This document shows, in pieces, positions 3,821 through 54,572 of a stretch of DNA of 64,000 nt; position 1 is the stretch's first letter, and every line of letters starts with the position of its first letter. Both the position numbers and the translations under genes were made by a program. The DNA lies in the IMG/VR virus record IMGVR_UViG_3300046660_000716, positions 124,001 through 188,000 of that record; one strand, given 5' to 3'. The notes under the pieces are model-generated. The model worked only from the letters and a program-made list of their open reading frames with translations. It was not told where the DNA came from and ran no database searches.

Positions 3821-4312
3821 TCAGACCGTGTCGAACGTCAGCGAGCATACTCCAGCAACGGGCTCGGTGAAGTCTATTTGGATGCGGTTGGCGTCCAGGG
3901 GGCGCCAGCCCGCGAGGTTCTGCTGCCCATCGCTGTCGATGATCATGATGGCGATGGGCACGCGCCCGCGGTTGTGCGAGATGACGGGGTTCTGGTTCAG
4001 CTGGAACGGGAACTGCTTCGTCACCGTCGCGTCGGTCGGGGCGAAGTAGAGCGTCCAGTTCGAGAGCTGCGTGGCCGGGAGCGCGGACAGCTTGTACCCG
4101 GCCGAGATGTCCGCGCGGCGGCAGAAATCGCCCACCCGCGCGGCCAGCGCCAGCATGTGGTTGACGTCGCTCGCTTCGAAGAAGCGCGGCATCGCGTCCA
4201 CCTGGGTCTTGTCGGCCTTCAGGCCGATGAGGCTGCGGAGCTCCAGGACGCGGGCTCCGACGAAGTTCCCGATGCGGGTCAGCGTCAGGGTGTTGGTGAT
4301 AGGGTCACTCAT
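3821..4312 (-). CDS. Virion/fibre-associated protein
   Basis: 163 aa; VISHNRGRVP...DANRIQIDFTEPVAG module shared with neighbours. Confidence 0.6.
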   Translation of the reverse strand: MSDPITNTLTLTRIGNFVGARVLELRSLIGLKADKTQVDAMPRFFEASDVNHMLALAARVGDFCRRADISAGYKLSALPATQLSNWTLYFAPTDATVTKQFPFQLNQNPVISHNRGRVPIAIMIIDSDGQQNLAGWRPLDANRIQIDFTEPVAGVCSLTFDTV

Positions 4313-6067: not shown

Positions 6068-7924
6068 TTACTTGTCGACGACGATGTCGATCATCACACG
6101 CTCGATCAGGCCGTTGAATACGACTTCGGCTTTGATACGGACGATGCGCTGCTGACGGTCGTAGGCGCTGGCGTACACGGTGCCGCTCGCCGAGTCCAGG
6201 GCGCGGTTGCTCACCCAGGTCTGCAGGTAGCTGTTGACCGAGTACTGCAGCGAGTCCCAGGTCTGGCCGTCGTTGAACTCGAACTCGTAGGTCTCACCGA
6301 TGTTCTCGAGCTCGCGGCGGATGCGCAGCAGGGTGCGGACGTGGCTGATGTCGCTCAGCGCCGAGTTGACGAACTGGCTCGTCGACTGGCTGTTGAACTT
6401 GGTCTGGCGCACGTCGCGCTCGACGTAGTTCAGCTTGGCCTTGTACAGCTCTTCGCGGTACACGTCGTTCGGAGCCCAGGACATCGACTTGAAGCCGGCC
6501 ACGGCGCCGCGGCGCGGGCCGACGAACGGCCAGTGGATGCCGAAGGCCGCGTCGTTCGACGGGATCTTCTCGGCCAGGAAGTAGGTCGGCGTGACCTGGA
6601 TGTCGTTGCCCTGGAACTCGTCTTCCACAACGAAGTCCTGCACGAAGATCGCGCTGTAGAACGAGTTGATGGACAGCTGGTTCTGGCGGATCTTGATGGC
6701 CTGGCCCGGCGAGCCGGTGAAGCCGACGTCCAGGATCGACATGAAGTCGCCGCGCGCGGAAGCGAAGTTCGACATCGCCACCTTGACCGACATCGGGTAG
6801 TTGGCGTCCAGCATCATGTCGAACGGGTACGCCTTCTTGTCCCACGCGTCCGAGAACAGCGTGTCGTAGATGTTGGCGCCGCTCGACGGATCGATGAAGT
6901 CGCCCGAGCCCGAGTACGCCTTGTACAGCAGCGCCTCCAGGCTGTTCGGGCCTACCCAGTCACCGTCCGAGCCGCCGCCCATCGGGCGGAAGACCTCGGG
7001 GGTCGGGGTCAGGTCGGCCGAGCCGCTGGCGACGGTCACGCCCGCGTGGATGGTTTCCGGCACGGACACGCTGCGCTCTTGCAGGGTGAACATGTCGATT
7101 TTCTTCGCCACGGTCGCATCGTCGTTGATGTACTCGGTGATCGCGTCGTAGCCGTCCTCGCTGAACAGGCCGCGGCCGTAGTTCGAAAAGTTCTTCAGCA
7201 CGTCGACGAAGAACTGGCTGGCGCCCGAGTTGTTGGTGGCTTCAGGGTAGAACGACACCAGGAAGGTCTCGCGCTGGTCCGACGCCGAGGCGTAGAACGC
7301 CATGTCGTAGACGCGGTGCGCGTAGGTCTCGTCCAGGCGATCGTTCAGATCGATGGACAGGCCGAATGCGTTGTACTTCACGCCGCGGTCCTTGCCGCGG
7401 ATCACGGCCAGGGGGTGGTACATGAAGCCGTCGGCTTCGGGGTCGTCCGGCTGCGCCAGGACCAGGCCCTGCAGCGACGCGTCGGTGCGGATGGCCTTCT
7501 CGGTGGCCGCCGGCAGCGCGCCGCGGCCATCGCCCAGGGTGCGGGTGCGGACCTTGACTTGCTTGCCGTTGGCGGTGTCGACCTTGCAGCCGACTTCGAG
7601 GATGTACGCAGCGTAGGTCGACTGCTGCAGCGGTGCATCGTTCGCATCCTTCTCGATGTACGGCAGCACGCGCAGGCACAGCGCGGCACCGCCGGCGCGG
7701 AGCCAGCGCACCACGTTGTACGCGGTCTGGCCGTACTTGCGCATGTTGGGTGCACCGTAGTAGAAGAGGAACTCGCTGTCGGTGGTGACCAGTTGGATGC
7801 GATTGTCCGGACCAGATTCAGCCGGGAAAGCAGCGTAAAGCAGAGTCAGACCGACTGCCGTCACGAAGACCTGACTGTTGTCAATGATCCGCGAGGTTAC
7901 AGAAGGGTGGAGGTATTCAGCCAT
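6068..7924 (-). CDS. Tail sheath protein
   Basis: Starts MAEYLHPSVTSRIIDNS; GGAALCLRV, GGSDG, LDANYP, WPFVGPRRG, ALSDISHVR, YEFEFND sheath motifs. Start revised from the ORF track's 8152. Confidence 0.9.
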   Translation of the reverse strand: MAEYLHPSVTSRIIDNSQVFVTAVGLTLLYAAFPAESGPDNRIQLVTTDSEFLFYYGAPNMRKYGQTAYNVVRWLRAGGAALCLRVLPYIEKDANDAPLQQSTYAAYILEVGCKVDTANGKQVKVRTRTLGDGRGALPAATEKAIRTDASLQGLVLAQPDDPEADGFMYHPLAVIRGKDRGVKYNAFGLSIDLNDRLDETYAHRVYDMAFYASASDQRETFLVSFYPEATNNSGASQFFVDVLKNFSNYGRGLFSEDGYDAITEYINDDATVAKKIDMFTLQERSVSVPETIHAGVTVASGSADLTPTPEVFRPMGGGSDGDWVGPNSLEALLYKAYSGSGDFIDPSSGANIYDTLFSDAWDKKAYPFDMMLDANYPMSVKVAMSNFASARGDFMSILDVGFTGSPGQAIKIRQNQLSINSFYSAIFVQDFVVEDEFQGNDIQVTPTYFLAEKIPSNDAAFGIHWPFVGPRRGAVAGFKSMSWAPNDVYREELYKAKLNYVERDVRQTKFNSQSTSQFVNSALSDISHVRTLLRIRRELENIGETYEFEFNDGQTWDSLQYSVNSYLQTWVSNRALDSASGTVYASAYDRQQRIVRIKAEVVFNGLIERVMIDIVVDK

Positions 7925-9416: not shown

Positions 9417-10451
9417 TCAGCTGGCCTCGTGCACGACGACGTCGTCGATGATCGCGGTGCCGTTGTTAGCCTGCGCCACGCGCACGACGTTGTCGTCCAG
9501 CAGGCGGAGCGTCTCCGCCTGCTTGTCGGTCAGCGCGCTGCGATCGATGGTCGGCTTCACGTAGCCGGCCAGCGCAGCCTCCTCCGCGAAGACGCGAGTG
9601 CCACCCAGCAGCGCCTTGTCGTTGAGCGCGGCCGTGCGCACGGGCATGCTGTCAAAGAGGGACACGCGGGGCGTGCGCTTGGCCAGCTCGGCCTCGTGGG
9701 CGACGCGCTCCTTGCGGTGGGCCTCGTACATGAAGCTCTGGATGGCGGCCAGGGCGGAGGCCACCAGCTCGACCTTCTCCTTGTCGTAGACCGATCCCTC
9801 GGGTAGCGACTGGAGGTAGCGGTCGGTGCCCGCGGCCGTGGTCAGGCGGCGAGTCGCCACGGACAGCGGCATGCCGTCCTCGATCAGGTTGCAGTTGGCG
9901 AAGTAATAGGCCAGGCGCAGGCGCAGCTCGTCGCGGTTGATGGTCGGGATCGCGGTGGCGAGATTCAGGGCGCCGTCGATGATGACCTGCGGGTCGACCA
10001 TCAGCCACTTGGCCTTGCGGAAGCGCTTGCGGGCCACGTTGATCAGCGGGATGGCACGGCCCGGGAACTTGAAGTCGCCGGCCTGGGGCTGGCGGTTGTT
10101 GCACACCGACAGGTCGATGACACCCGGGCGCACGGCATTCAGCTGCGCTTCCATGCGCTCGATCTGGCGCAGGCGGATCTCGGCCGCGCGGCCGGTCATC
10201 TGCGACAGCTGGACGCGCTGCTGGGCGACGGTGCGCACCATGTCGTCCACCATCGTGGCGGCCTTGGCGTTGAAGTCCTTGGCCTCGGCCTTGGACGTGT
10301 CGGCGAACACCTTCTGGTCGGCGGCTGTCAGGCCCAGGTTGTTCAGCGTGTCGGTGATCACTTCCTCGACTGTCGCGGTGGTCAGGCGGTCCTCCAGGCT
10401 CTCGTCCTGGTGGGCTTGGATCTCTTGGGCGGTGCTGGTGGCGTCGTTCAT
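9417..10451 (-). CDS. Hypothetical protein (late operon)
   Basis: MNDATSTAQE..., start overlaps the upstream stop. Confidence 0.65.
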   Translation of the reverse strand: MNDATSTAQEIQAHQDESLEDRLTTATVEEVITDTLNNLGLTAADQKVFADTSKAEAKDFNAKAATMVDDMVRTVAQQRVQLSQMTGRAAEIRLRQIERMEAQLNAVRPGVIDLSVCNNRQPQAGDFKFPGRAIPLINVARKRFRKAKWLMVDPQVIIDGALNLATAIPTINRDELRLRLAYYFANCNLIEDGMPLSVATRRLTTAAGTDRYLQSLPEGSVYDKEKVELVASALAAIQSFMYEAHRKERVAHEAELAKRTPRVSLFDSMPVRTAALNDKALLGGTRVFAEEAALAGYVKPTIDRSALTDKQAETLRLLDDNVVRVAQANNGTAIIDDVVVHEAS

Positions 10452-19696: not shown

Positions 19697-19797
19697 CTTG
19701 CAGAAGAGAGGCCACCCCTACCCTCCCGGGGTAGGGGCAATCGAAAACCAACCGAAGGAGAATCACATGAACACCCAAGCACGCGTGGAGGCGCAGG

Positions 19798-20312: not shown

Positions 20313-22415
20313 CTACATCGGGAAGTCGCCGCCGCTCCCAGACGAGTTGAGGTCGTTCAGGATGCTCGCCATGCGCGCCCTCTTGGCCGCCTTCTCGTCG
20401 GTCATGGCGTGGTCCGCCCGCGCGACGTAGTCGTCCACGCTGACCTCCTTCTTTCCGGTCAGGGCGACGGGCACCGCCGGCCGGTCGCCGACGATGTTGA
20501 GGGCCGACACCGCGTTCATCTGGGACGCGTTGCGCTCTCCGCCCTGGCGGCCGCGCGAGATCATGCCGCGGAGCACAGGCTGGTCGTGGCGGTCGGCATA
20601 GATGCCGATCAGGAAGGACATCAGCACGTCGTCGTGGAACCCGGCGCGCGCCTCGATCTTGCCGGTCTTCTTGCGGTGCAGCGTCCGGATCTCGTCCTGC
20701 AGGTCCTCCGCTCGGATCAGGTGCGGCAGCTCGTCCACGATCTGGAAGAGGTGCCGGAACATGGCCTCGCGGCTCTCGGCGGTCGTGTCGACGCCGTAGA
20801 CGCGCACGCGCTTCTTCTGCTTAACGACCATCTTGCCGATCGTGCGCTCCGCCTCGCGCTCCTTCTCCAGGTAGAAGATCCGGGGCTCCAGGCCGGGGAC
20901 TTTCAGCAGGTGGTTGATGACCACGATGCCCAGGTAGTTGCGCTCGATGACCGCGATGCAGCGCGGGAAGAGGGACGTCATGAAGTGCTCGGTGAGCGCC
21001 CTCACCGCTCCGTCGTCGGCGGTGTTCGTCTTCAGCGTGCCGATGATGCGCATGTCGTCCGGGTGCAGCAGGTTGAACGCGGTGTAGTCGCGCCCGACGC
21101 CGCCGGACGTGTCGACGGTGAGCAGGTACGGCAGCACAGTGTCCGGCATCTCGGTGAACTCGACCTCCAGTCCCGGCTGGATGTGGGCGTGGCGCAGCTT
21201 GACCGGCAGGGTCGCCACGACGGGCTTCTGGTGCTTGCGCAGGTTCTCGAGCTGGTTCTCGTCGAAGACGGCGCCCTCGGTCGAGATCGGCCAGACCAGC
21301 AGGATCTCCCGCTTGATCTTCATCTGGTCGTTCAGCAGCTCGCGGCACTGCTCCTTGAACCACGCCTCGCTCCGGCCGAGCTCCTTGTAGGTGTACTCGG
21401 CGTAGAGGTAGTTGTACTCGGCGAGCTCCTCCATCATCTGGCGGACCTTGGTCGGGCCGTAGTCGTAGAACTCCAGGCGGAAGCGCAGGGAGCCGTTGCG
21501 GATCATGTAGGCGAACATGCCGGACGGGTCGTCCTGCGAGTTCGGCGTCGTGGTGATCACGGTGCCGAACGGGACGCCCATCTTGATCGCGGATGCGCGG
21601 GCCTGGGACTGCGCGGGGACCGCGGCCATGTACGTCTCGCGGATGAACTTCATGAACGCGATCTCGTCGTACCACACGGACGGCACGGTGTTGCCTCGTC
21701 CAAGCTTGTCGGCGTGCTCGGTGCTGGTGCCGGCCGCCTTCGGATCGATGCGGTTCTTGCGATTCTCGGAGTAGATGTACTCGATCGCGTTGCGGTCGCT
21801 GTCGTGGTCCAGGACGTTCTCCCGCAGCCAGTTCGGCAGGTTGTCCTGGATGTCCTTGACGCGCTTCAGATTGTTCTGGCTGTCCTTGAGCTCCTTGTTG
21901 AAGAACAGCATGTGGCTGTTGGTCGTCGAGAAGCCGTACTGCCAGAGGTAGATCGCGCAGGCCGACACCGTCTTGTAGTTCTGGCGCGGCAGGAGGAGGT
22001 AGCAGTTCAGGTTGCTGACCATCGCCCACGTCAGGAAGAGGTTCCCCAGGTGGAGCTCGTAGGGCACCCAGCCGCCCGGCACCGGAATGCGGACGACCTC
22101 GCGGATGAAGTAGAACGGGTTGCGGGTGATCTCCACCAGGATGCGGGCTTGGATCTCCTCCGGGAGGTCCTCGCGGTGGGGGTCGACTCCCACCAGGTCC
22201 AGGTCGTACAGCGCCAGCATGAAGGCGTTGTTCTTGATCCCCTTCTCCGCCAGGTGCGCGGAGACCTTGGTGAAGCTCTTGTTGTTCGTCCCGAAGTCGG
22301 CGTAGTAAGGGCGGCCCGGGATCTGCACGACTCCCACAGGCTGCTTCACGGGCACGGGCACCTTCAGGCGGGGCGGCAGCATGACCGGCGCCCTCTCTTT
22401 GACTGCAGCAGCCAT
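20313..22415 (-). CDS. terL: Terminase large subunit
   Basis: NPFYFIRE, LPRQNYKT (Walker A), WYDEIAF (Walker B), ITTTP, VDTSGGVGRDYTA and HDDVLMS nuclease motifs. Confidence 0.92.
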   Translation of the reverse strand: MAAAVKERAPVMLPPRLKVPVPVKQPVGVVQIPGRPYYADFGTNNKSFTKVSAHLAEKGIKNNAFMLALYDLDLVGVDPHREDLPEEIQARILVEITRNPFYFIREVVRIPVPGGWVPYELHLGNLFLTWAMVSNLNCYLLLPRQNYKTVSACAIYLWQYGFSTTNSHMLFFNKELKDSQNNLKRVKDIQDNLPNWLRENVLDHDSDRNAIEYIYSENRKNRIDPKAAGTSTEHADKLGRGNTVPSVWYDEIAFMKFIRETYMAAVPAQSQARASAIKMGVPFGTVITTTPNSQDDPSGMFAYMIRNGSLRFRLEFYDYGPTKVRQMMEELAEYNYLYAEYTYKELGRSEAWFKEQCRELLNDQMKIKREILLVWPISTEGAVFDENQLENLRKHQKPVVATLPVKLRHAHIQPGLEVEFTEMPDTVLPYLLTVDTSGGVGRDYTAFNLLHPDDMRIIGTLKTNTADDGAVRALTEHFMTSLFPRCIAVIERNYLGIVVINHLLKVPGLEPRIFYLEKEREAERTIGKMVVKQKKRVRVYGVDTTAESREAMFRHLFQIVDELPHLIRAEDLQDEIRTLHRKKTGKIEARAGFHDDVLMSFLIGIYADRHDQPVLRGMISRGRQGGERNASQMNAVSALNIVGDRPAVPVALTGKKEVSVDDYVARADHAMTDEKAAKRARMASILNDLNSSGSGGDFPM

Positions 22416-22493
22416 GGCTGGCCCTTTCTGTTGGATGTCTATCACAAGTGGATGTTTCGCCCCATCCGGCGGCGGCCGGATGGGGTTGTAGGA

Positions 22494-23144
22494 TCATCGG
22501 CCCGGCGGACGGGGCGCGGTGATCGGGGCGTCGGCGGTCTTCGCCTTCTCGGCCACGAGGCCCTTCAGGGTCTGGTCGGCGGTCAGCTGCCAGTCGTGCA
22601 TGCTGCGCAGCTCGGTGGCGACGTAGCCGATGGAGGTCACGATTACCATCTGGATGATGCCCATGAGCACGGACGCGGCGAACCAGGCGCCCTTGCCCTT
22701 GTTGATCCAGGATTCCGACTCGGCCTTGACCGTGGTCACCTTGGTGTCCAGGCTGGAGACGCTCTGGGTCAGCACCTCGAGGGCGGTGGTCATCTGGTTG
22801 GCGATCTCGTTGCGGTGGCTCGTTGTGAACTCGTGGAACTCGATGCGCACCTTCTGCGTGTCGTCTTGGACCTGCGCGCGAACGTCGTCCATGCGCTCGT
22901 GGACCCGGATGATGGACTTCTCCATCTTCTCCAGGATCTCGGCGAGACGCTGGTCCGTGTCCATCTGGCGACGCTCGGTGGTGGCCTGTCGCTCCAGCAG
23001 CGCCGGGTAGGAGTTGACGGTCTGCTTGATCTCGCCGACCGCGGTGGTGAGGTGGCGGATCTCCGTCACCAGCACCTGAATGGTGCCGGCCGTGCCGCCG
23101 TCGTCCCGGCCGTGCTGCATGGTTGAAATTTCGCCGTGGCTCAT
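22494..23144 (-). CDS. Coiled-coil protein with a C-terminal TM helix (holin/lysis-like?)
   Basis: Long coiled coil followed by GKGAWFAASVLMGIIQMVIVTSIGYV. Confidence 0.55.
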   Translation of the reverse strand: MSHGEISTMQHGRDDGGTAGTIQVLVTEIRHLTTAVGEIKQTVNSYPALLERQATTERRQMDTDQRLAEILEKMEKSIIRVHERMDDVRAQVQDDTQKVRIEFHEFTTSHRNEIANQMTTALEVLTQSVSSLDTKVTTVKAESESWINKGKGAWFAASVLMGIIQMVIVTSIGYVATELRSMHDWQLTADQTLKGLVAEKAKTADAPITAPRPPGR

Positions 23145-23215
23145 GTGGAAGTCCGTTGGTAAATTGGGTGGGTGTCGCGGCTAACGCGTCTATCAGTTAG
23201 TTCCGCGAGACCGGC

Positions 23216-23317
23216 AAAAAGAGTCGCTTCCCCCGAGAGGGAAGCGACCAAAGTCTTGGCAGGGATGGGCCAGGATCAGCAGAAAGGAAAACACAGCGGG
23301 AAACCGTACACGCCTTC
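23216..23317 (-). ncRNA. Candidate late small RNA
   Basis: AACA-N6-TG at 23328-23317 and an intrinsic terminator at 23248-23216, with no convincing ORF between. Confidence 0.4.
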
Positions 23318-23368
23318 ATGGGTATGTTGACCGGCGGACTCATCCAGAGAGTGACTTCGGACGCGGTG

Positions 23369-23405
23369 AAAAAGCCCCTACCCCGCGAAGGGTAGAGGCT
23401 TTTCT
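23369..23405. terminator. Terminator of the major capsid gene
   Basis: aaaaagcccctaccc...gggtagaggctttt. Confidence 0.75.
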
Positions 23406-23419
23406 GGTCGGACCAGGAA

Positions 23420-25036
23420 TTACGCAGGCAGGGTGCCGTTGTTGTTCTTGATCACGATCTTGCCAACCAGCGGAACGAATTCCTGGAAGGCTTGGCGCTT
23501 GGTCAGCAGGACGCTCGGCACGTTCGGCGAGTTAGGCGACACGAAGCCCGAGGCACTACGCTCCACGTTGAACGTGTATGGGTAGTACATCAGGGTCTTG
23601 ATGTCGTCCTGACCTGGCACGAAGAACACCCACAGCTCGCCAGCCGGCAGGTTCTGGCTGGAGAACATCATGTAGCGCTGGGTGCCGCTCATGGCGCCGA
23701 TGCTGTAGTTCACGTCCACGCCGTCGCGCTGAGCGTCGGCCTGTGCGGTGAAGATCCAGTTGACGCCGGTGAACAGGTTCACGTCGATCGGGTTGCCGAC
23801 GATCATGAACGTGCCGCCCGAGAAGTTCGAGTAGTTGCGCATCGACTGGGCCAGATTGTCGGTGATGCGCTTCAGCTCGTTCAGCCAGTCGGTAGGCGAA
23901 CCCATGTAGTTGCCGGTCGGCCACACGTCGAAGGTGCGCACGAACTGTGCGCCCTGGGCGGCGATGTGGTCGGCAGCGTCGGAGATGAAGCCGGCGCCTT
24001 GCAGGTCCACCTTCTGGGCCAGCACTTCGGTCATGATGTCCACGACCTTCAGGGTGCCGTCGATGTTGTACAGCGCCAGGTTGTCCTGGAGCCATTCCAG
24101 CGGCAGCGCTGCATCGAAGTGCTCACCGGTGCCGATGTGGATCTCGGTGGTCTTGATGTCGAAGCCGATGGTGGTCGACTGCTTGTTGGAGGTGGTCTCC
24201 AGCTTGCCCGACAGGTAGATCTTGGTGATCTGCGCCTTGGCGGCGGTCGCGCCCGACGACAGCGAGGTCGCGGTCAGGGTGCCGTCGGCGGTCGACACGA
24301 AGCCGAACACGGTGTCGCTCGACTCGTGGCCGTCCACGCTGTGCTGGGCGGTCGCGGTGAAGCGGATGTTGCCCTGGCGGGTCTCGGCCTTGCCGTCGTA
24401 CACTGGCACCTTGACCTGGGTCTCGGCGTTGGCACCGGCGGCGTCGGTCACGACGATGTCGACAGCGACAACCGCGAACACTGGGTCCAGGTTGTAGCCA
24501 GCCGAAACCGGGCAGCCGACAGGCATGATGTCCACGACGTCCATCGGCAGCGCGTGCGCGGCGCCGTCGATCTTCTTCTGCGAATTGCCCAGGGCAGGAT
24601 CGCGCAGAGCTTGCGGCAGCTCTTTCTTCAGGCCGGTGACCGGATCCTTGATGTAAGGAATCAGGTGCGACACGGTGAATTTCGGGGTCTTGACCGGCTC
24701 GGTCGGCAGCGCTTCCTTGATGCCGATCTTCGGCCAGGCCTTGCGCAGCATCGGCATGGTCAGGACGGACACCGGTTGGATGCCGCTCAGCGAGCTCTCG
24801 CGGAACACGGTAGCCTGGAAGTTATCTGCCAGGATCGACAGCGCGTCGGCGCTGTCTGCGCTCATGCCTTCGGACAGCATGGACTTGTACTGGCGGTACA
24901 GGGCTGGCTCGGTCAGAGCTTCCTGCATGCCGGCGATCGTCAGGACGTTGACGTGGTCTTTGGCGCGCAGGGTGTCGACGGTCTCGCGCAGCACGGCGGA
25001 ATAGCCATCGTTGCGCGCATTATTGAATTGCGTCAT
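23420..25036 (-). CDS. Major capsid protein
   Basis: 538 aa with strong codon bias. N-terminal propeptide ending near FRES, then PMLRK, IVGNPIDV, YYPYTF and NVPSVLLTKR: a gp23-like HK97-fold MCP of jumbo phages. Confidence 0.85.
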   Translation of the reverse strand: MTQFNNARNDGYSAVLRETVDTLRAKDHVNVLTIAGMQEALTEPALYRQYKSMLSEGMSADSADALSILADNFQATVFRESSLSGIQPVSVLTMPMLRKAWPKIGIKEALPTEPVKTPKFTVSHLIPYIKDPVTGLKKELPQALRDPALGNSQKKIDGAAHALPMDVVDIMPVGCPVSAGYNLDPVFAVVAVDIVVTDAAGANAETQVKVPVYDGKAETRQGNIRFTATAQHSVDGHESSDTVFGFVSTADGTLTATSLSSGATAAKAQITKIYLSGKLETTSNKQSTTIGFDIKTTEIHIGTGEHFDAALPLEWLQDNLALYNIDGTLKVVDIMTEVLAQKVDLQGAGFISDAADHIAAQGAQFVRTFDVWPTGNYMGSPTDWLNELKRITDNLAQSMRNYSNFSGGTFMIVGNPIDVNLFTGVNWIFTAQADAQRDGVDVNYSIGAMSGTQRYMMFSSQNLPAGELWVFFVPGQDDIKTLMYYPYTFNVERSASGFVSPNSPNVPSVLLTKRQAFQEFVPLVGKIVIKNNNGTLPA

Positions 25037-25126: not shown

Positions 25127-25762
25127 CTAGTTTGTTGGTCCGGAGTCGGGTTTCCGGAAGTCATCGTCACCATCAATTACGTGTTTGATGATTTCGGCCA
25201 CAGCGGACACTCTTTCTCGCACGGTGACGTACACGTCGCGGACGCGTTCGTAGCCGAGGTCGGCGAACCGGGCGCGCAGCGTGGTGCACTGCTCGTTCGC
25301 CTCGTCGATCAGAGCCTTGGAGCGCGTGATGTACTTCTGGCCGACTGGGTCCTTGATGCGGTCCAGCAGCTGCTCCGACGCCGTGCTGAGCGCCTGGCAC
25401 TGGGCCTGGATCTCAACGAGGCTGTCGTACATGCGCTCGCGCTTGATCTTCTCGGACGCGGGGTCCGGGGCGGAGGCCGGAGCCCCGTCGGCGGAGCCGT
25501 CTCCGGGATCGTCACTGCCCAGCTCGGATGTGTCGCTGTTGTCGTCGTCATCGATGTTGAAGTCCGACGATCCGTCGTCGGCAGGAGGGTCCGCCGGGTC
25601 CGCGTCCGGCTTGGCTGCGGGTTTGGCCTTCGGATCTTTGGGCGCGTCGGGCTTGGCCGCTGGATCCACGGCAGCCTTGCCGCCCGGCTCCTTCAGCTCC
25701 TTCTCGTCCTTCGGGGGGTCGCCCGGCGCCTCGTTCAGGGGCACGTAGCCGGTCAGGATCAT
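25127..25762 (-). CDS. Head assembly/scaffold-like protein
   Basis: Acidic, Pro-rich N-half and helical C-half, directly upstream of the MCP. Confidence 0.55.
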   Translation of the reverse strand: MILTGYVPLNEAPGDPPKDEKELKEPGGKAAVDPAAKPDAPKDPKAKPAAKPDADPADPPADDGSSDFNIDDDDNSDTSELGSDDPGDGSADGAPASAPDPASEKIKRERMYDSLVEIQAQCQALSTASEQLLDRIKDPVGQKYITRSKALIDEANEQCTTLRARFADLGYERVRDVYVTVRERVSAVAEIIKHVIDGDDDFRKPDSGPTN

Positions 25763-26106
25763 ACGCCCGCCGTTTTGCGCTTGACCGCGTCCTTGAGGAC
25801 CTTGGCGGCGCGGAAGGACACGCGGCGGCCGGCCTCGATGGCGACGACCTCGCTGGTGCGGGGGTTGCGGCCCTCGCGCGGCTTGGTCTCGATGATGCGG
25901 AAGTTGCCCAGGTTCGGCACCCGGACCGTGGCGAAGCGCCCGGCCAGGGAGGCGATGCCGCGGGTCACGCTGTCCACGATCTTGTTGGAATCGGCCTTGG
26001 TGGTGTCCAGGTCCTTGGAGACGAAGGCGACCAGCTCCTCGCGGCCCGCCGGGTCCGGCTCACCGGCCAGGCGCCGGGTTCGCGGCGCTGCGGTTTCAGT
26101 AGTCAT
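25759..26106 (-). CDS. HU/IHF-family DNA-binding protein
   Basis: VPNLGNF...REGRNPRTSEVVAIEA.RRVSFRAAKVLKDAV signature. Confidence 0.88.
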   Translation of the reverse strand: MTTETAAPRTRRLAGEPDPAGREELVAFVSKDLDTTKADSNKIVDSVTRGIASLAGRFATVRVPNLGNFRIIETKPREGRNPRTSEVVAIEAGRRVSFRAAKVLKDAVKRKTAGV

Positions 26107-28507: not shown

Positions 28508-28569
28508 AACCAAAGCGGTCCTACCCTTCGCGGGTAGGGCTCTTTCCAACCTAACCGAAGGAGCAATTC

Positions 28570-42060: not shown

Positions 42061-43587
42061 ATGGAACTCTCCGCACTCAACGTCGACAAGTTCATCGAGG
42101 TGAACCAGCTGCAGCCCGTGACGGCCCTCACCTTCTTCGAGGCGACCGGCGCTCCCACGGAGGGCGGCCTGTTCTCCACGTCCATCTTCGGGCGGGCCGG
42201 GTCCGAGGACCGCCGCCGCCGCTGGGCCTATATCGACCTCAACGGTCGCTTTCTGCATCCGCTCGTCTATAAAACGATCACCCAGTTGAACCGTAAGTTC
42301 CCCGACATCGTGGCCGGCCTGCAGCGCGTGCGGCTCACCCGCTCCGGCGAGATGCAGAACGTCCCCGACGAGGAGAACGAGGGCTGGAGCGGCCTGGACG
42401 CGCTGTACGAGCACTGGACCGAGATCAACTGGGGTGTGGCCGAGCCGGGCTCCCAGCGCGCCGAGCGCGTGGGCATGCTCAACGCCCTGCGCAAGCACCG
42501 CGACATCGCGTTCGTAACGAGGTGGCACGTCATCCCTGCCATGTTCCGCGACGTGGACACCTCCTCGGGCGACCGCATCAAGGAGGTCCCGCCCATCAAC
42601 TCGCTGTACATCCAGATGATGACCAGCGCGCCAACCCGCGTGTCCGGCCTCACCTTCGTCGACGGGACCAGGAAGCGCCGGGCGCAGGAGACGCTGTACG
42701 AGCTGCACCGCTCCGCCCTGGACCTCATCAGCGGCAAGCACGGCCTGATCCAGGACCGCGTGCTCGGCAAGTACACCGACTGGGCAGTGCGCGGCGTGCT
42801 GTCCGGCCCGGCGCTGGCCAAGGCGGCCAAGCCCGGGGAGCAGGAGGTTCCGTTCGGCACCATCGGCATGCCGCTGTACCTGGTGATCAACGCCTTCCAG
42901 CCGTTCGTCATCAAGCGGCTGACCGAGATCTTCCGACTGTACGCCACCGGGCAGGAGCGCATCCTGGTGCGCACCGAGGAGGGCAAGGAGCCGGTGTACT
43001 TCGAGATCCCGGCCGAAGCGAAGGCCCAGCTGGAGCCGGAGCTGTACAAGAAGTGGATCTCCCGCTTCATGCGCAGCCAGGCCAACAGGCTGGACGTGGT
43101 GTCGCTGAAGACAGGCAAGGGCAAGACGATCGCCCTGCCGCTGTACGACGCGGTGCTGGGGCGCCCGACGACCCTGCTGGACCTCTTCTTCATTGTAGCG
43201 CAGGACGTGATCGCGGACAAGTACGTGATGTTCACGCGGTACCCCGTCGAGGACTTCCGGGCGTGCCACTTCGCCAAGCCCGTGGTGCTGACCACGGAGC
43301 GAACGGAGTTGGTCACGATCGGTGCTCACGAGTATAAGCGCTACCCGATCATCACAGGGCGGCCAAGGTGGATTGACAGCTTCCGGATCAACAACAGCTA
43401 CACGAAGGCGATGGGCGCCGACTACGACGGAGACACGCACCGGGTGGTCGGAATCTTCACGCAGGAGGCCAACGCCGAGGCGGAGCATCTCATCCAGCAG
43501 CCGACGAACTACTGCGACGGCCAGGGCAACGCCAGCCGCCCCGTGGCCAACGAGGCCATACTCACGCTGTACGCTCTGACCAAGTAG
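42061..43587 (+). CDS. RNA polymerase beta' N-terminal/catalytic subunit (probably virion RNAP)
   Basis: GGLFSTSIFG, AYIDL..FLHP, VIPAMFRD, GKHGLIQDRVLGK, TRYP and catalytic GADYDGD; late-type promoter. Confidence 0.9.
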   Translation: MELSALNVDKFIEVNQLQPVTALTFFEATGAPTEGGLFSTSIFGRAGSEDRRRRWAYIDLNGRFLHPLVYKTITQLNRKFPDIVAGLQRVRLTRSGEMQNVPDEENEGWSGLDALYEHWTEINWGVAEPGSQRAERVGMLNALRKHRDIAFVTRWHVIPAMFRDVDTSSGDRIKEVPPINSLYIQMMTSAPTRVSGLTFVDGTRKRRAQETLYELHRSALDLISGKHGLIQDRVLGKYTDWAVRGVLSGPALAKAAKPGEQEVPFGTIGMPLYLVINAFQPFVIKRLTEIFRLYATGQERILVRTEEGKEPVYFEIPAEAKAQLEPELYKKWISRFMRSQANRLDVVSLKTGKGKTIALPLYDAVLGRPTTLLDLFFIVAQDVIADKYVMFTRYPVEDFRACHFAKPVVLTTERTELVTIGAHEYKRYPIITGRPRWIDSFRINNSYTKAMGADYDGDTHRVVGIFTQEANAEAEHLIQQPTNYCDGQGNASRPVANEAILTLYALTK

Positions 43588-48965: not shown

Positions 48966-49007
48966 AAAAAAAAAGGAAGAGCCCCTACCCCTCGACGGGG
49001 TAGGGGC
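48964..49007. terminator. Terminator between convergent genes
   Basis: A tract plus gcccctacccc/ggggtaggggc. Confidence 0.75.
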
Positions 49008-50466: not shown

Positions 50467-52043
50467 TTCACGTAGTCCGTTTCTTCCAGCTCGAGGCTGA
50501 TTTTCTTGAAGAGCTTGCGTCGCTCCTTGCGGGACGACTCGATCTTCGGGAAGCCCGCATCCCAGATGTCCCACAGGTAGCAGGGCGCTCCGTCGACGCC
50601 GCGCAGGCGGCCCGACACCTGCTCCACCCACACCGCGCTGGAGATCGGCGCGAAGAGGAGGAGGTGGGTCATGCGGATGGGGTTGACGCTACCGTTGAAG
50701 CTTTTCTCCGTCGTGACGACGATGTCCTTGTGGAGCTCGACGTCACGCAGCTCGCCCGCCTTGACGCGGGACGAGAAGTTGCCGACCGAACGCTCCGGGA
50801 ACGTCGCCCTCATCAGCTTGACCGTGGCGTCCAGGAACTCCAGGCGCCCCGACACGACGATGCCGACGCTGTTGCAGTCCGGCGCGGCCAGAGCGCGGCC
50901 CACGAGGGCCGTCGCCATCTCGGCCCAGGCCTCCCACTGGTCGACCAGCGCGATGCGGTCGAAGAAGTAGACCGGGTCGAAGAACTTGCGGCGGTTGACG
51001 CTCTTCGCCACCTCCTTCTCGGTGGGATTGCTGTTGTACTTGATCTGGCGCACGATGAGCCGGGCCGGAGACGCGATGACCAGCGCCCAGTCGCGCGGCA
51101 TCTGCGCGCCGTACACGCGGTCCTCCATCCACTCCGATCGCTTGGCCGTGGCGGTGAGGTAGAACGTGCGCTCCACGTTGATCATCATGGCGAGAGTGAT
51201 CAGGCTGGCGAGCTCCAGGTGGCACTCGTCGGAGACGTGCGTGCCGACGCCCAGGTCCTGCACTAGCTTGACGAACTCGCTGACGCCGGACATGATCTCG
51301 CCGGTGACGACGCTGGAGGCGCAGGACGCCACCGTGCGGTGCAGGACCAGGCAGACCTTGGCCGTGGCCACGGTGCCCTTCTTGTACGCTTTGCGGATGC
51401 TCTCGCGGCCGTCGTCGATCACCAGGATCTCGTCCTCGGTCAGGTCCGTGAACTTGAGCAGCTCGACCCTGAAGTTCTCGAGGTGGGCGCTGGCGGCGAA
51501 GGTCCCGAGCAGCACGTCGCTGGAGTCCACCCAGGACCGGATGGCCGCGTAGCTCTTGCCGGCGGCGGTGCCCGCGACGACGAGGCGCGCGCCGGGGTTC
51601 TGGCCTGCGTAGTCGCCGACGCACGACAGGTAGTCGTGGACGCGGCGCTGGTCGTCGTTCTTGTACGGGAAGTCCTTGGTTTTGAACTTCACCCGGACCT
51701 TGCGCGCGACCCACACGCGGTCGTCGTCCACCAGCTTGTGAGCCGGGAACGCCGAGGAGATCTCGTCTGGGCTCAGGGCGCCCGGCAGGCGCAGGACGCG
51801 GCGGCGCTGGGGGTCCATGTCGTAGAGCATGGCCTTGTACGTCACCCAGCTGGCGCCGGTCGGCTCGCTCTCGCGCACGGACAGCCGGTTCTCCAGGGCG
51901 GAGAAGCCGGCGGCGTCCTTGCTCTGCGGGCTGTACACCAGCCAGTGGTTGCGGCGCCGGATGGCGAGCAGCGGCGCCGGAGCGCTGTCGGCCACGGCCT
52001 GCTGCGCGGGGGAGTCGGGGGGAGGGTTGCGGTGCGCCGTCAC
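50463..52043 (-). CDS. SF2 (DExH, UvsW-like) helicase
   Basis: GTAAGKS, SDECH, LTAT, EQVSGRLR. Confidence 0.85.
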   Translation of the reverse strand: MTAHRNPPPDSPAQQAVADSAPAPLLAIRRRNHWLVYSPQSKDAAGFSALENRLSVRESEPTGASWVTYKAMLYDMDPQRRRVLRLPGALSPDEISSAFPAHKLVDDDRVWVARKVRVKFKTKDFPYKNDDQRRVHDYLSCVGDYAGQNPGARLVVAGTAAGKSYAAIRSWVDSSDVLLGTFAASAHLENFRVELLKFTDLTEDEILVIDDGRESIRKAYKKGTVATAKVCLVLHRTVASCASSVVTGEIMSGVSEFVKLVQDLGVGTHVSDECHLELASLITLAMMINVERTFYLTATAKRSEWMEDRVYGAQMPRDWALVIASPARLIVRQIKYNSNPTEKEVAKSVNRRKFFDPVYFFDRIALVDQWEAWAEMATALVGRALAAPDCNSVGIVVSGRLEFLDATVKLMRATFPERSVGNFSSRVKAGELRDVELHKDIVVTTEKSFNGSVNPIRMTHLLLFAPISSAVWVEQVSGRLRGVDGAPCYLWDIWDAGFPKIESSRKERRKLFKKISLELEETDYVK

Positions 52044-52567: not shown

Positions 52568-54436
52568 CTACCCACCAAAGAGGCTATCGATCACCCCGGG
52601 CTGCGTCTTGCGAAGGATGTCCGTGGAGGTCAGCTGCGCCTTGACGCGCTCGAACGCCAGCGAGTTGGTGACGCTCGGGCTGGACAGGATGGCCGGGGTC
52701 AGCTTCAGGACGGCGTACGGCGGCTCGTCCGGGCCGGTCGAGAAGTCCGGGCGGTTCATGTGGTCGGTGGCGCTGCGCACCTGGGCGCGCAGGATCATCT
52801 CGGCGTGGACCGACGGGGTGCGCAGCTCGGATTTGGTGAGCAGCGCCATCAGGCGGGCGTACGCGTCGTGGTACGTGGCGATCTCCTCGCGCTCGATCAG
52901 GTTGAAGATCGAGTGCAGGGCCTCGGACAGGTCCGTGTTGCTGATCGGGACCTGGAAGACCGAGCTGTCCTGCAGCGGGGACAGGGTGAGCTCGCCGTCG
53001 TCGACCTCGGTGTTCTCCCACGCCTCGTCGTCGAGGTAGATGGGCACCGGGGTCGTAATCTTGATCCGGCTCTGCTTGCCGGCGATCTTGTAGTAGAAGA
53101 TCGTGGTGGAGCGGCGGTCCTCGTCCTCGTCGAGCTCGATGTCGTCCTGCTTGACGTACACGCGGAAGACGGTGCTCTCGGCGATGACCGAGGTGCGCTC
53201 GACGGAGAAGTGCTTGAGGAAGTCCTCCGGCCAGTTGATCTTGGTCGGGCGAGCCTTCAGCAGGTGCTTGGAGGACAGCAGGCGCTGCAGGATCTGCTCG
53301 GAGATGATCAGCACACCGTAGATGCCGGCGTGGATGCTCGCGTTGCTGCGGGCCAGGGCGCCGTAGCAGTGGTGGCAGACGCCGTTCTTGCCCGCGCAGG
53401 TGATCGGCGAGCGCAGGGCGATGTCCTGTTCGACCAGGCCCTCCAGCTCGCCTTCCTCGGCGAGGTGCCACTGCTGGTTGGCGTGGGTGGCGATGTAGCG
53501 ACCCTCCAGGCGAGCCGCGTGGTCCAGGCTCAGGACCTTGGTCTGCACGCCGTGCAGCGTCTCGCAGTCCTCCAGGTCCGGGTCGATGAAGTGGTTGGCG
53601 ACCAGCAGGACCAGCTTGCGCGACAGGTAGCCCGAAGTCTTCACCTGCTTGTAGTTGGTGGTCAGCGCCTTGCGGGCGCCGATCGCGCAGATGTAGAAGT
53701 CTTCGACGCCGCGCATGCCGCGCAGGAAGCTGGTGTCGATCGGCTCCGGCATCAGCTGGCCGTCCATCAGGCCCGGCTTCACGCCGATGCTCACGAACGC
53801 CTGGCGCATCTGGCCGATGTTGACGGCCGAGCCCGAGCGCAGGAGGCGACCCAGCTCGCCGGGCAGCGCCTTCAGGCGCGTGTTCAGCTCTTCGGTGGCC
53901 GCGTCGGCGGCCTTCTCGATGTCGCCCAGCTCGCCCACGGGGGCCTGCCAGCGCAGCAGCTTGCGGATCTCGGGGTCGCGCTCGCCGGCCTCGAAGAGGC
54001 CCTTGATGCTGATGCTCGTGCCTACGCGCCCGACCACGGCGATCGCCAGGTCCTGCACGTAGTTCACGGCGGCGGCGACGGCCATGTTCAGGGTGTCCGG
54101 GTCCAGCACGCGGTACAGCGCCTTGATGGTGACGTCCAGGTGGACTTCCAGGTACTTCGCGTTGATGATCTCACGCACAAAGCGGTCGGCCGGCGGCTGG
54201 ACCTGGGCGACGTGGTACGGGTAGAGCAGCGACAGGCTCGCTAGCGCGCGCCCGACCGACATTTCCTCCGGCCCGTTGCCGCACTCGACGAGGATGGTGC
54301 CGTGGCGGCCGCCGTCCTCTCCCAGCGAGAGCTCGTGCAGCTGCTGCATGACGTCCTCGTAGCTCCCGCCTTCCTGGTCTGCCAGCGCGGCGACGAGGTC
54401 CACGACCTGAATGTCGGCTTCCATCATTTGATCCAT
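52568..54436 (-). CDS. RNA polymerase beta' C-terminal subunit (probably non-virion RNAP)
   Basis: SGSAVNIGQMRQ, PIDTSFLRG, GARKAL...KTSGYLSRKL, DC, RSPITC...GVCHHCYG, QRLLSSKH. Confidence 0.9.
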   Translation of the reverse strand: MDQMMEADIQVVDLVAALADQEGGSYEDVMQQLHELSLGEDGGRHGTILVECGNGPEEMSVGRALASLSLLYPYHVAQVQPPADRFVREIINAKYLEVHLDVTIKALYRVLDPDTLNMAVAAAVNYVQDLAIAVVGRVGTSISIKGLFEAGERDPEIRKLLRWQAPVGELGDIEKAADAATEELNTRLKALPGELGRLLRSGSAVNIGQMRQAFVSIGVKPGLMDGQLMPEPIDTSFLRGMRGVEDFYICAIGARKALTTNYKQVKTSGYLSRKLVLLVANHFIDPDLEDCETLHGVQTKVLSLDHAARLEGRYIATHANQQWHLAEEGELEGLVEQDIALRSPITCAGKNGVCHHCYGALARSNASIHAGIYGVLIISEQILQRLLSSKHLLKARPTKINWPEDFLKHFSVERTSVIAESTVFRVYVKQDDIELDEDEDRRSTTIFYYKIAGKQSRIKITTPVPIYLDDEAWENTEVDDGELTLSPLQDSSVFQVPISNTDLSEALHSIFNLIEREEIATYHDAYARLMALLTKSELRTPSVHAEMILRAQVRSATDHMNRPDFSTGPDEPPYAVLKLTPAILSSPSVTNSLAFERVKAQLTSTDILRKTQPGVIDSLFGG

Positions 54437-54471
54437 TTGGTACCCCTTGGTTTGTGTTGCGAGTGAATCAG

Positions 54472-54489
54472 ATTATACACTTTTTTGTT
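54472..54489 (-). promoter_or_regulatory. Composite promoter for the beta'-C gene
   Basis: AACA-aaaaag-TG followed immediately by TATAAT on the minus strand. Confidence 0.55.
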
Positions 54490-54572
54490 GCAAACGTGTT
54501 CAATTTTTCACCCAAAGCTAGTGCGATGCGAAAACAATACCCCTACCCGTTCCCGGGTAGGGGGCGTTGCTG

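What the first reader, a model, noticed from the sequence alone, without database searches (positions are those of the whole stretch)
23216..23328. Insulated ~100-nt late small RNA downstream of the capsid gene
Seen: after the MCP terminator comes an AACA-taccca-TG promoter, a pyrimidine-rich body (UGUGUUUUCCUUUCUGCUG, anti-SD-like CCUUUC) and its own terminator (GUCGCUUCCC/GGGAAGCGAC plus U tract). The only ORF (about 40 codons) has no RBS, atypical codons and runs through the terminator. The CCUUUCUG stretch is complementary to the CAGAAAGG leaders before 12979, terL and 60001. Inference: a trans-acting sRNA or a packaging-associated RNA.
Basis: partly seen in the sequence, partly recalled or inferred. 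Interest (0 to 1): 0.6.

Follow-up and report, generated by a model that had tools for sequence, protein, structure and literature searches.

The report
Candidate late small RNA unit in jumbo phage
Between the capsid gene and the next late gene of a 259-kb AR9-like jumbo phage lies a promoter-to-terminator unit of about 100 bases that codes for no protein; it probably makes a small late RNA, but its expression and its targets are untested.

Summary
The order is capsid terminator T1 (23403..23369), AACATACCCATG (23328..23317), a pyrimidine tract (23295..23277), then a 12-bp hairpin with a U5 run, T2 (23249..23216).

The 12-mer fits the published AR9 late-promoter consensus. In this genome that motif is about 3-fold enriched in non-coding DNA, and 31 of 36 copies point at a co-oriented gene. 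One in this gap by chance is expected about 0.03 times. No reading frame looks coding.

The unit has no detectable sequence homologue. The closest relative (L001) has the same layout directly upstream of the orthologous 216-aa gene. L012 and L005 also carry late promoter, CU-rich body, terminator units with no ORF. The L001 and L012 units are homologous and show CUUUCCUCCUUUC in a hairpin loop. The window's copy lacks the CCUCC core and that hairpin.

Pairing to the CAGAAAGG leaders is no better than chance, because those leaders are ordinary ribosome-binding sites. A packaging RNA has no support.

Best reading: an insulated late non-coding unit, most likely a trans-acting anti-SD-type small RNA. 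A cis leader/attenuator of the 216-aa gene is nearly as likely. No read data could be obtained.

The parts
23420..25036 (-). Major capsid protein gene, upstream neighbour
   Evidence: 538 aa, 37% identical to the AR9/PBS1 major head protein. GC3 is 0.89.
23369..23403 (-). T1, intrinsic terminator of the capsid gene. It belongs to a recurring CCCCTACCC/GGGTAGGGG hairpin family.
   Evidence: 11-bp stem at 23399..23374 followed by TTTTT. Paralogous hairpins occur elsewhere in the genome and after the capsid gene in L001, L004 and L008.
23317..23328 (-). P1, late-promoter motif AACATACCCATG, with predicted start at G23317
   Evidence: Consensus from PMC5449584. Enrichment and orientation statistics.
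23216..23317 (-). Predicted non-coding transcript of about 102 nt
   Evidence: Runs from the predicted start to the end of the U-run. No coding signature. The fold is a weak 5' structure plus the terminator.
23277..23295 (-). Pyrimidine-rich, anti-SD-like tract. CCUUUCUG lies at 23287..23280.
   Evidence: In the minimum-energy fold CCUUU pairs with the 5'-terminal GAAGG.
23216..23249 (-). T2, the unit's own intrinsic terminator
   Evidence: 12-bp perfect stem with 7 G-C pairs, a 4-nt loop, then CUUUUUG.
23197..23343 (-). Spurious 48-codon ORF
   Evidence: GC by codon position is 0.53/0.57/0.59. It runs through T2, and its inner ATG lies inside P1. No Pfam hit.
23191..23202 (-). Near-match AACTAACTGATA downstream of T2, probably not a promoter
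   Evidence: Read. The AACT variant shows no intergenic enrichment. L001 has a canonical AACATACCATTG at the equivalent place.
22494..23144 (-). 216-aa coiled-coil-like gene, downstream neighbour. Its orthologue in L001 has the same kind of upstream unit.
   Evidence: GC3 0.93. Only sub-threshold matches to coiled-coil and apolipoprotein-type families. 52% identical to L001 7302-7934.
20313..22456 (-). terL with its own late promoter (22456..22445) and a CAGAAAGG leader (22430..22423). The start codon is ATG 22415.
   Evidence: Terminase large subunit by PHROGs, E 5e-62. Promoter and leader.

Best explanation
This is a real, insulated, late, non-coding transcription unit. The phage's own multisubunit RNA polymerase would start at G23317 from an AR9-type late promoter and stop at the strong intrinsic terminator T2, giving an RNA of about 100 nt that is not translated.

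It is one of a loose set of 'late promoter, CU-rich body, terminator' units found in the variable capsid-terL interval of related jumbo phages. I commit to a trans-acting mechanism. The exposed pyrimidine tract would pair with purine-rich Shine-Dalgarno leaders of phage or host mRNAs late in infection and lower their translation. This is how bacterial anti-SD-motif small RNAs work.

Shown: the promoter motif and its genome-wide statistics, the terminator, the absence of coding potential, and positional and architectural conservation.

Inferred: that the RNA accumulates, that it acts in trans, and what it targets. The window's copy is a divergent or weakened member. It lacks the CCUCC core and the loop-presenting hairpin seen in L001 and L012.
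For: Promoter:
- It matches the published AR9 late consensus.
- The motif occurs 36 times against 10.6 expected in non-coding DNA, and 31 of 36 copies are co-oriented with a downstream gene.
- Of AACA and its 12 single-base variants, only AACA shows this enrichment.
- The phage encodes split RNA-polymerase beta-like genes.

Terminator: 12-bp G+C-rich stem plus U5.

Non-coding: GC3 is 0.52-0.63 in all six frames, against 0.8-0.95 in genes.

Comparative:
- L001 (capsid protein 85% identical) has AACAGATCGTTG, a CU-rich body, a terminator, then a canonical second promoter and the orthologue of the 216-aa gene. There the unit is insulated from the gene.
- L012 has a unit homologous to L001's (local alignment z 4.9). 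The hairpin around the CU loop keeps 2 compensatory pairs. The unit is followed by a second hairpin flanked by an A-run and a T-rich tail (my reading) and has no coding signature.
- L005 has capsid gene, T1, promoter, a structured 5' hairpin (z -5.3), single-stranded UUUCCUCC and a terminator.
- Four-fold degenerate sites of the capsid gene are only 61% identical between the window and L001. I infer that a perfect 12-bp hairpin and a 6-base promoter core would not persist in both lineages without selection.

Precedents: short promoter-to-terminator units have been mapped as small RNAs in jumbo phages 201phi2-1 and phiKZ (PMC11512511). CU-rich anti-SD small RNAs are established in alpha-proteobacteria (PMC7143759).
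Against: - No expression data.
- The window unit has no significant sequence similarity to the L001, L012 or L005 units (z about 0). A covariance model built from L001 and L012 does not find it at E up to 10.
- The body without the terminator is no more structured than shuffles (z 0.09).
- The CU tract is partly paired to the 5' GAAGG in the minimum-energy fold.
- Pairing to translation-initiation regions is not better than for shuffled bodies: 92% of shuffles reach the observed minimum.
- L001-L012 identity over the aligned columns (74%) equals their identity at four-fold sites (74%). Their resemblance alone therefore does not prove constraint.
- The window has no canonical promoter between T2 and the 216-aa gene, which favours a cis role.
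- Only 3 of about 13 distinct relatives carry such a unit.
Confidence: 0.38

Rival explanations
1. The unit is a cis-acting leader/attenuator. P1 would be the promoter of the 216-aa gene (and possibly of terL read-through), and T2 a premature terminator in its 173-nt 5' UTR that sets or times expression. The ~100-nt RNA would be a by-product, as in the '5'UTR-derived sRNAs' of 201phi2-1 and phiKZ.
For: - The unit lies directly upstream of, and is co-oriented with, the same orthologous gene in the window and in L001.
- In the window no canonical late promoter lies between T2 and ATG 23144. The AACT near-match belongs to a variant with no intergenic enrichment.
- 8 of the 11 short units in 201phi2-1 were of this type, and antitermination was proposed there.
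- Other promoters in this genome are followed by hairpin plus U-run structures before a gene, for example at G000:C1 about 113817.
Against: - L001 has a canonical second promoter after the unit's terminator, so the gene there does not need P1.
- In L012 and L005 the units are not followed by an adjacent co-oriented gene within the DNA held.
- T2 is very strong, and I saw no alternative anti-terminator pairing in the leader (my reading).
- The CU tract is not complementary to the 216-aa gene's initiation region (my reading).
Confidence: 0.3
2. The unit is a non-functional relic. The capsid-terL interval is a hot spot for cargo turnover, and a promoter and terminator were left behind when a cargo gene was lost. 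Alternatively T2 is merely a back-up terminator for the highly transcribed capsid gene, and the promoter match is chance.
For: - The interval holds different cargo in every relative: Zn-ribbon endonuclease-like genes, a holin-like gene, small ORFs and reversed genes. This includes AR9.
- In L013 and L016 the same promoter motif just after the capsid terminator drives a cargo gene.
- L053 has two tandem terminators after the capsid gene.
- The window unit has no detectable homologue, no structured body and a degenerate CU motif.
Against: - A chance promoter match in the gap is expected only about 0.03 times.
- The same promoter-to-terminator layout is kept upstream of the orthologous gene in L001 although neutral sites have diverged (61% identity at four-fold sites). 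Both terminators are near-perfect hairpins of different sequence.
- No protein-remnant similarity to relatives' cargo genes: tblastx gives only E values of 0.015 or worse.
Confidence: 0.2
3. The unit encodes a small protein: the 40-48-codon ORF, or an 11-codon mini-ORF starting at a GUG near the 5' end.
For: Open frame at 23343..23197. A GAAGG lies at the very 5' end of the predicted RNA, just before a GUG.
Against: - GC3 is 0.59.
- The frame runs through the T2 hairpin.
- Both ATGs lie upstream of or inside the promoter, so they would be absent from the predicted transcript.
- GAAGG is 1 nt from the GUG, too close for a Shine-Dalgarno.
- No Pfam hit.
- The units in L001 and L012 have no conserved frame.
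Confidence: 0.03
4. The unit is a packaging-associated RNA in the manner of the phi29 pRNA.
For: Only its position between the capsid and terminase genes, and its late promoter.
Against: - No Rfam match in gathering mode, and no pRNA match in E-value mode.
- No significant structure outside the terminator.
- Not conserved across relatives that share the capsid and terL genes.
Confidence: 0.02

Closest known systems
Short promoter-to-terminator units ('sRNAs') mapped by ONT-cappable-seq in jumbo phages 201phi2-1 and phiKZ (PMC11512511; 11 in 201phi2-1, of which 3 are intergenic and 8 arise by premature termination in a 5' UTR)
   Same: A jumbo phage with its own multisubunit RNA polymerases. 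A start site is followed within 250 nt by a terminator. The unit lies in an intergenic or 5'-UTR context next to late structural genes. Position relative to an orthologous gene is conserved between related phages.
   Different: Those units rest on transcript data; this one rests on sequence only. That clade (phiKZ-like) and its promoter type differ from this one (AR9-like AACA motif). No sequence relationship was seen or expected.
Alpha-proteobacterial anti-SD-motif small RNAs: alpha-r8/MmgR (Rfam RF00519 suhB), alpha-r14/NfeR1, alpha-r15/AbcR (PMC7143759)
   Same: RNAs of about 80-120 nt with CU-rich anti-Shine-Dalgarno motifs in unpaired regions or hairpin loops, variable stems, and an intrinsic terminator. 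The L001 and L012 units show this design. The window's 3' half gives a weak full-length match to RF00519 that shares UGCUG, UCCCU and AGACUUU plus the terminator.
   Different: The score is 23.6 bits against a gathering score of 41. The E-value of 0.004-0.008 holds only for the 200-350 nt searched, and the whole-window gathering search found nothing. The first hairpin of the model is missing. The unit is phage-encoded and driven by a phage late promoter, not sigma-70. Hfq dependence and targets are unknown. The L001 and L012 units give no Rfam hit.
AR9 late transcription units (non-virion RNA polymerase promoter 5'-AACA-N6-T-A/G; PMC5449584, PMC5312081)
   Same: Identical promoter consensus. 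The capsid protein is related. The backbone is the same: capsid gene, variable cargo, terL.
   Different: AR9 has only a 66-nt gap after its capsid gene and no such unit. Whether this 66% G+C phage has the uracil-containing DNA that the AR9 enzyme requires is unknown.

Membership tests
AR9-type late promoter | AACA at -11..-8, T at -1, A or G at +1 | tested here: met
   AACATACCCATG at 23328..23317. Consensus from PMC5449584.
AR9-type late promoter | The motif behaves as an oriented signal upstream of genes in this genome | tested here: met
   36 copies against 10.6 expected in non-coding DNA. 31 of 36 are co-oriented with a downstream gene, mostly 20-75 nt upstream of the start. Single-base variants are not enriched.
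AR9-type late promoter | The phage encodes a non-canonical multisubunit RNA polymerase | tested here: met
   RNA-polymerase beta-like genes at 52568-54436 (-) and 42061-43587 (+), PHROGs E 1.7e-57 and 2e-81. I did not look for the promoter-specificity subunit.
AR9-type late promoter | Uracil in the template strand; a mapped start site; late timing | not testable with these tools
   This needs base-composition chemistry and transcript mapping.
Intrinsic terminator | G+C-rich hairpin followed directly by a U-run | tested here: met
   12-bp stem, 7 G-C pairs, 4-nt loop, then CUUUUUG.
Rfam RF00519 suhB/MmgR (alpha-r8) | Score at or above the curated gathering threshold of 41 bits | tested here: not met
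   23.6 bits. The first hairpin is absent from the alignment. Nothing found in gathering mode.
Trans-acting anti-SD small RNA (functional class) | An accessible CU-rich seed | tested here: inconclusive
   The tract exists (23295..23277), but CCUUU pairs weakly with the 5' GAAGG in the minimum-energy fold, and the body's z-score is 0.09.
Trans-acting anti-SD small RNA (functional class) | Complementarity to initiation regions beyond chance | tested here: not met
   The minimum and mean duplex energies, and the number of strong duplexes, against 254 initiation regions all lie within the shuffle distribution. The three CAGAAAGG leaders are ordinary ribosome-binding sites and only one of them is among the 15 best-pairing regions.
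L001/L012 CU-loop unit family | Detectable by sequence or by a covariance model | tested here: not met
   Local alignment z is -0.09 and -0.29. Model R1 gives no hit at the element at E up to 10.
L001/L012 CU-loop unit family | Same position and architecture: late promoter, CU-rich body of about 100-145 nt, strong terminator, in the capsid-terL interval | tested here: met
   L001 7095-7222 lies upstream of the orthologue of the 216-aa gene. L012 3898-4052. L005 5659-5800.
5'UTR-derived small RNA by premature termination (201phi2-1/phiKZ type) | A start site followed by a termination site under 250 nt upstream of a co-oriented gene | tested here: met
   In silico only: predicted start at 23317, T2 end at 23216, ATG at 23144.
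5'UTR-derived small RNA by premature termination (201phi2-1/phiKZ type) | Read enrichment of the short species | not testable with these tools
   No runs could be obtained.
phi29-type pRNA | Match to the pRNA family or a comparable conserved multi-helix fold | tested here: not met
   No Rfam match. No structure beyond the terminator.
Small protein gene | Coding codon-position signature, a ribosome-binding site, and a conserved frame | tested here: not met
   GC3 0.59, and the frame crosses T2. No conserved frame in the L001 or L012 units.

The most novel reading that the evidence does not exclude
AR9-like jumbo phages of this clade may carry a family of late-expressed RNAs that mimic the 16S anti-Shine-Dalgarno sequence. 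In L001 and L012 the motif CCUCCUUUC sits in a hairpin loop. Such RNAs would bind SD leaders in bulk and retune which mRNAs are translated late in infection. The window's unit would be a diverged member aimed at AGAAAGG-type leaders such as that of terL.
Probability: 0.15. Interest if true: 0.7.

Novelty: new member of a known kind. Interest (0 to 1): 0.42.

Why it matters
Small RNAs of virulent phages are barely characterised. In jumbo phages, which bring their own RNA polymerases, only a few short transcription units have been mapped and none has a known target.

This locus gives a precisely bounded candidate: a predicted start at 23317 and an end near 23216. It has three comparators in related phages, and two of them display an anti-SD motif in a loop. 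If the RNA is made and acts in trans, it would show a phage using an anti-SD RNA to steer translation late in infection. If it acts in cis, it would be a handle on termination and antitermination by the non-canonical phage polymerase.

The analysis also supplies a usable late-promoter definition for an uncultivated, high-G+C branch of the AR9 group.

Tried and rejected
**Searches for DNA homologues of the element**
- Megablast and blastn against the phage collection gave none.
- blastn-short against 13 relatives' loci matched only the T1 hairpin.
- A self-search of the genome found paralogues of the T1 hairpin only.
- tblastx for a gene remnant found nothing.

**Searches for more relatives**
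- Capsid-protein relatives in viral contigs and genome contigs: none.
- Relatives of the 216-aa protein in viral contigs: none.
- Searching the relatives' records by handle, or by 'relatives': not available for these records.

**RNA families and models**
- Rfam in gathering mode: no match.
- Rfam in E-value mode: only a sub-threshold suhB/MmgR match and chance hairpin hits.
- tRNA and tmRNA: none.
- Covariance model R1, built from the L001 and L012 units, did not find the window unit. Its other hits were terminator hairpins or the antisense of a ribosome-binding site.

**Motif scan**
- The L001/L012 motif with its G-run gave 0 matches in viral contigs.
- It gave 47 in genome contigs, about my chance expectation of 35, plus an Archaeoglobi cluster. 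No bacterial source is indicated.

**Target tests**
- Duplex energies against all initiation regions were no better than for shuffled bodies (a first attempt timed out).
- The terL leader is not among the 15 best-pairing regions.
- The terL leader in L001 is not complementary to that phage's CU loop (my reading).

**Reads**
I did not try again or use another tool, so read laying was never used.

**Other**
- The 216-aa product called in L005 turned out to be the N-terminal piece of a split terL, not an orthologue of the window's 216-aa gene.

Full report
**Context**

The window is bases 124001-188000 of a single 259,338-bp contig with 65.6% G+C. It is a jumbo phage.
- The 538-aa product of 25036..23420 (minus strand) is 37% identical over its full length to the major head protein of Bacillus phages AR9 and PBS1.
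- The window also holds a tail sheath gene, DNA polymerase genes, a terminase large subunit gene and two split RNA-polymerase beta-like genes.
- A rough gene map based on third-position G+C (0.8-0.95 in real genes) shows a minus-strand block. Its order is an HU-like gene, a 211-aa gene, the capsid gene, the finding, a 216-aa gene with only sub-threshold matches to coiled-coil-type families, and terL.

**Observation**

- T1 is an 11-bp hairpin at 23399..23374 followed by UUUUU.
- T2 is a perfect 12-bp hairpin at 23249..23222 followed by CUUUUUG.
- Between them lies AACATACCCATG at 23328..23317.
- The pyrimidine tract is at 23295..23277.
- The 275-nt gap has 57% G+C. None of its six frames has a coding signature: GC3 is 0.52-0.63.
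- The 48-codon ORF has GC3 of 0.59 and runs through T2.

**Is the promoter call more than chance?**

The AR9 non-virion RNA polymerase recognises 5'-A(-11)ACA-(6N)-U-A/G(+1) (PMC5449584). The 12-mer fits exactly, with +1 at G23317.
- In this genome AACA-N6-TA is intergenic in 13 of 22 cases and AACA-N6-TG in 23 of 111, although only 8.6% of the DNA is non-coding.
- Most intergenic copies lie 20-75 nt upstream of a co-oriented start codon.
- Non-coding DNA holds 36 copies against 10.6 expected from composition.
- 31 of the 36 point at a co-oriented downstream gene.
- The expectation for one on the right strand in the 120-nt T1-T2 gap is about 0.03.
- Of AACA and its 12 single-base variants, only AACA shows this excess.

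The usual module in this genome is terminator, late promoter, gene. This gap is the only one of the 48 non-coding gaps of at least 150 nt with terminator, promoter, terminator.

**The predicted RNA**

The RNA from 23317 to about 23216 is 102 nt. Its fold is dominated by T2 (z -2.2). The 66-nt body alone is no more stable than shuffles (z 0.09), and CCUUU pairs weakly with the 5' GAAGG. Rfam in gathering mode finds nothing in the window, and there are no tRNAs.

**Target claim**

CAGAAAGG occurs seven times in the genome. Three copies sit at the ribosome-binding position: before 12979, before terL (ATG 22415) and before 60001.

The phage's ribosome-binding consensus is AAGGA/AGGAG/AAAGG, so any CCUUUC string matches many leaders. 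Duplex energies of the body against 254 initiation regions fall inside the distribution for dinucleotide-shuffled bodies: 92% of shuffles reach the observed minimum. In a scan with the 25-nt tract, only one of the three leaders ranks among the 15 best-pairing regions, and terL does not. The complementarity exists but carries no weight as evidence.

**Relatives**

The capsid protein has metagenomic relatives at 60-85% identity. I fetched about 13 distinct loci.

The capsid-terL interval is a variable cargo region in all of them, and in AR9. It holds Zn-ribbon endonuclease-like genes, a holin-like gene, small ORFs and reversed genes. In L013 and L016 the same promoter motif just after the capsid terminator drives a cargo gene. 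No locus has DNA similar to the element.

Three loci have the same kind of unit.

1. L001 (capsid protein 85% identical) carries the only orthologue of the 216-aa gene (52% identity). Directly upstream of it, in order:
   - AACAGATCGTTG at 7095-7106;
   - a 117-nt body whose 5' hairpin shows UCUUUCCUCCUUUCU in its loop;
   - a strong terminator;
   - a canonical second promoter, AACATACCATTG, at 7237-7248;
   - a 48-nt leader and the ATG.
2. L012 (83%) has AACATCCCCATG at 3898-3909, the same CU loop, and a terminator at 4017-4042. The unit is followed by a second hairpin flanked by an A-run and a T-rich tail (my reading). No frame there looks coding.
3. L005 (79%, A+T-rich) has the capsid gene, T1 and AACATAATGTTG. 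These are followed by a 25-bp 5' hairpin (z -5.3), single-stranded UUUCCUCC and a terminator.

The L001 and L012 units are homologous. Their local alignment has z 4.9, with the conserved block at the same offset from the start site. The loop-closing stem shows two compensatory pairs, but this rests on only two sequences.

**Limits of the comparison**

- The window unit is not significantly similar to any of the three (z about 0).
- A covariance model built from L001 and L012 does not detect it.
- It lacks the CCUCC core and the loop-presenting hairpin.
- L001-L012 identity over the aligned columns (74%) equals their identity at four-fold degenerate capsid-gene sites (74%), so that resemblance may be mere ancestry.

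Against this, the window and L001 are only 61% identical at four-fold sites. Both still keep a full promoter core and a near-perfect, differently sequenced terminator hairpin at the same place relative to the orthologous gene. I take that as evidence of selection on the promoter-to-terminator architecture. This step is inference.

**Trans or cis?**

For an independent RNA:
- L001 has its own promoter after the unit.
- In L012 and L005 the units are not followed by an adjacent co-oriented gene within the DNA held.
- T2 is strong.

For a leader/attenuator:
- The window has only a non-enriched AACT near-match (23202..23191) between T2 and ATG 23144.
- Most short units mapped in jumbo phage 201phi2-1 arise by premature termination in 5' UTRs (PMC11512511).

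I rank the trans-acting anti-SD small RNA first (0.38), the attenuator second (0.30), a relic or back-up terminator third (0.20), and a peptide or a packaging RNA as unlikely.

**Comparison with known families**

In E-value mode the 3' 73 nt give a full-length but sub-threshold match to Rfam suhB/MmgR: 23.6 bits against a gathering score of 41. They share UGCUG, UCCCU, AGACUUU and the terminator, but lack the first hairpin.

MmgR, NfeR1 and AbcR are alpha-proteobacterial small RNAs with CU-rich anti-SD motifs in unpaired regions (PMC7143759). The design is the same, most clearly in L001 and L012, but membership is not met. The L001/L012 motif with its G-run has no counterpart in viral contigs, and it occurs in bacterial genomes only at about the chance rate.

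**What could not be done**

There is therefore no evidence on expression, transcript ends or timing, and read laying was not used.

**Verdict**

The specific target claim and the packaging idea are not supported. The locus is a reasonable, well-bounded candidate for transcript mapping. It is a new member of a known kind of element, not a new kind.

Noticed in passing
window 23374-23399, 19710-19742, 28518-28540, 48981-49007, 54540-54563; G000:C1 about 51325-51350; L001 5655-5690, L004 5623-5655, L008 5642-5669: Terminator hairpins with nearly the same stem (CCCCTACCC / GGGTAGGGG) recur through this genome. They also follow the capsid gene in relatives of very different G+C content. A second family (GCCCATGCCC / GGGCATGGGC) recurs as well. 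The stem sequence may therefore matter beyond simply forming a hairpin.
   Followed up: partly
window 26228, 11421, 57522, 54470-54480; further copies across G000:C1: A second upstream motif of the form (C/G/T)ATAT(A/C/T)AT(T) sits before many genes, including RNA-polymerase and replication genes. It is probably the early (virion RNA polymerase) promoter class of this phage.
   Followed up: partly
G000:C1 about 89168 (window coordinate -34832) and about 113817 (-10183): Two other late-promoter motifs are followed almost at once by a hairpin and a long T-run. One would give a transcript of only about 30 nt. The other lies in the 5' UTR of a 173-aa gene. Both are further candidates for attenuated or very short units.
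   Followed up: no
capsid-terL interval: window 22457-23419; L001 5615-9001; L004, L008, L010, L012, L013, L052, L053; AR9 locus L055 4079-6292: The interval between the capsid and terL genes is a cargo hot spot in the whole clade. Free-standing Zn-ribbon (faint DUF4379 hits) endonuclease-like genes often sit right after the capsid terminator with their own late promoter.
   Followed up: partly
L005 8127-8744 and 8992-9594: terL of this relative is split by about 250 nt, as by an intron or intein-like insertion. In AR9 terL is annotated as joined from five pieces.
   Followed up: no
window 25759-26106 (-): An HU-like DNA-binding protein gene (Pfam Bac_DNA_binding, E 7e-19) heads the capsid gene block. 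It is conserved at that place in nearly all relatives fetched.
   Followed up: no
contig behind P0016 (no DNA held), gene at 9635 (-): A 68-aa product has a weak ribosome modulation factor (RMF) hit near the capsid-terL region of a relative. This could be another way these phages affect translation initiation.
   Followed up: no
L012 4053-4327: After the CU-loop unit, L012 has at least 270 nt more of non-coding DNA. It holds a hairpin flanked by an A10 run and a T-rich tail, and a second CU-rich stretch (CUUCCUCCC ... CCUUUC).
   Followed up: no
window 22494-23144 (-): The 216-aa protein just upstream of terL matches only PHROGs families of unknown function. A small terminase subunit is a possibility that I did not test.
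   Followed up: no
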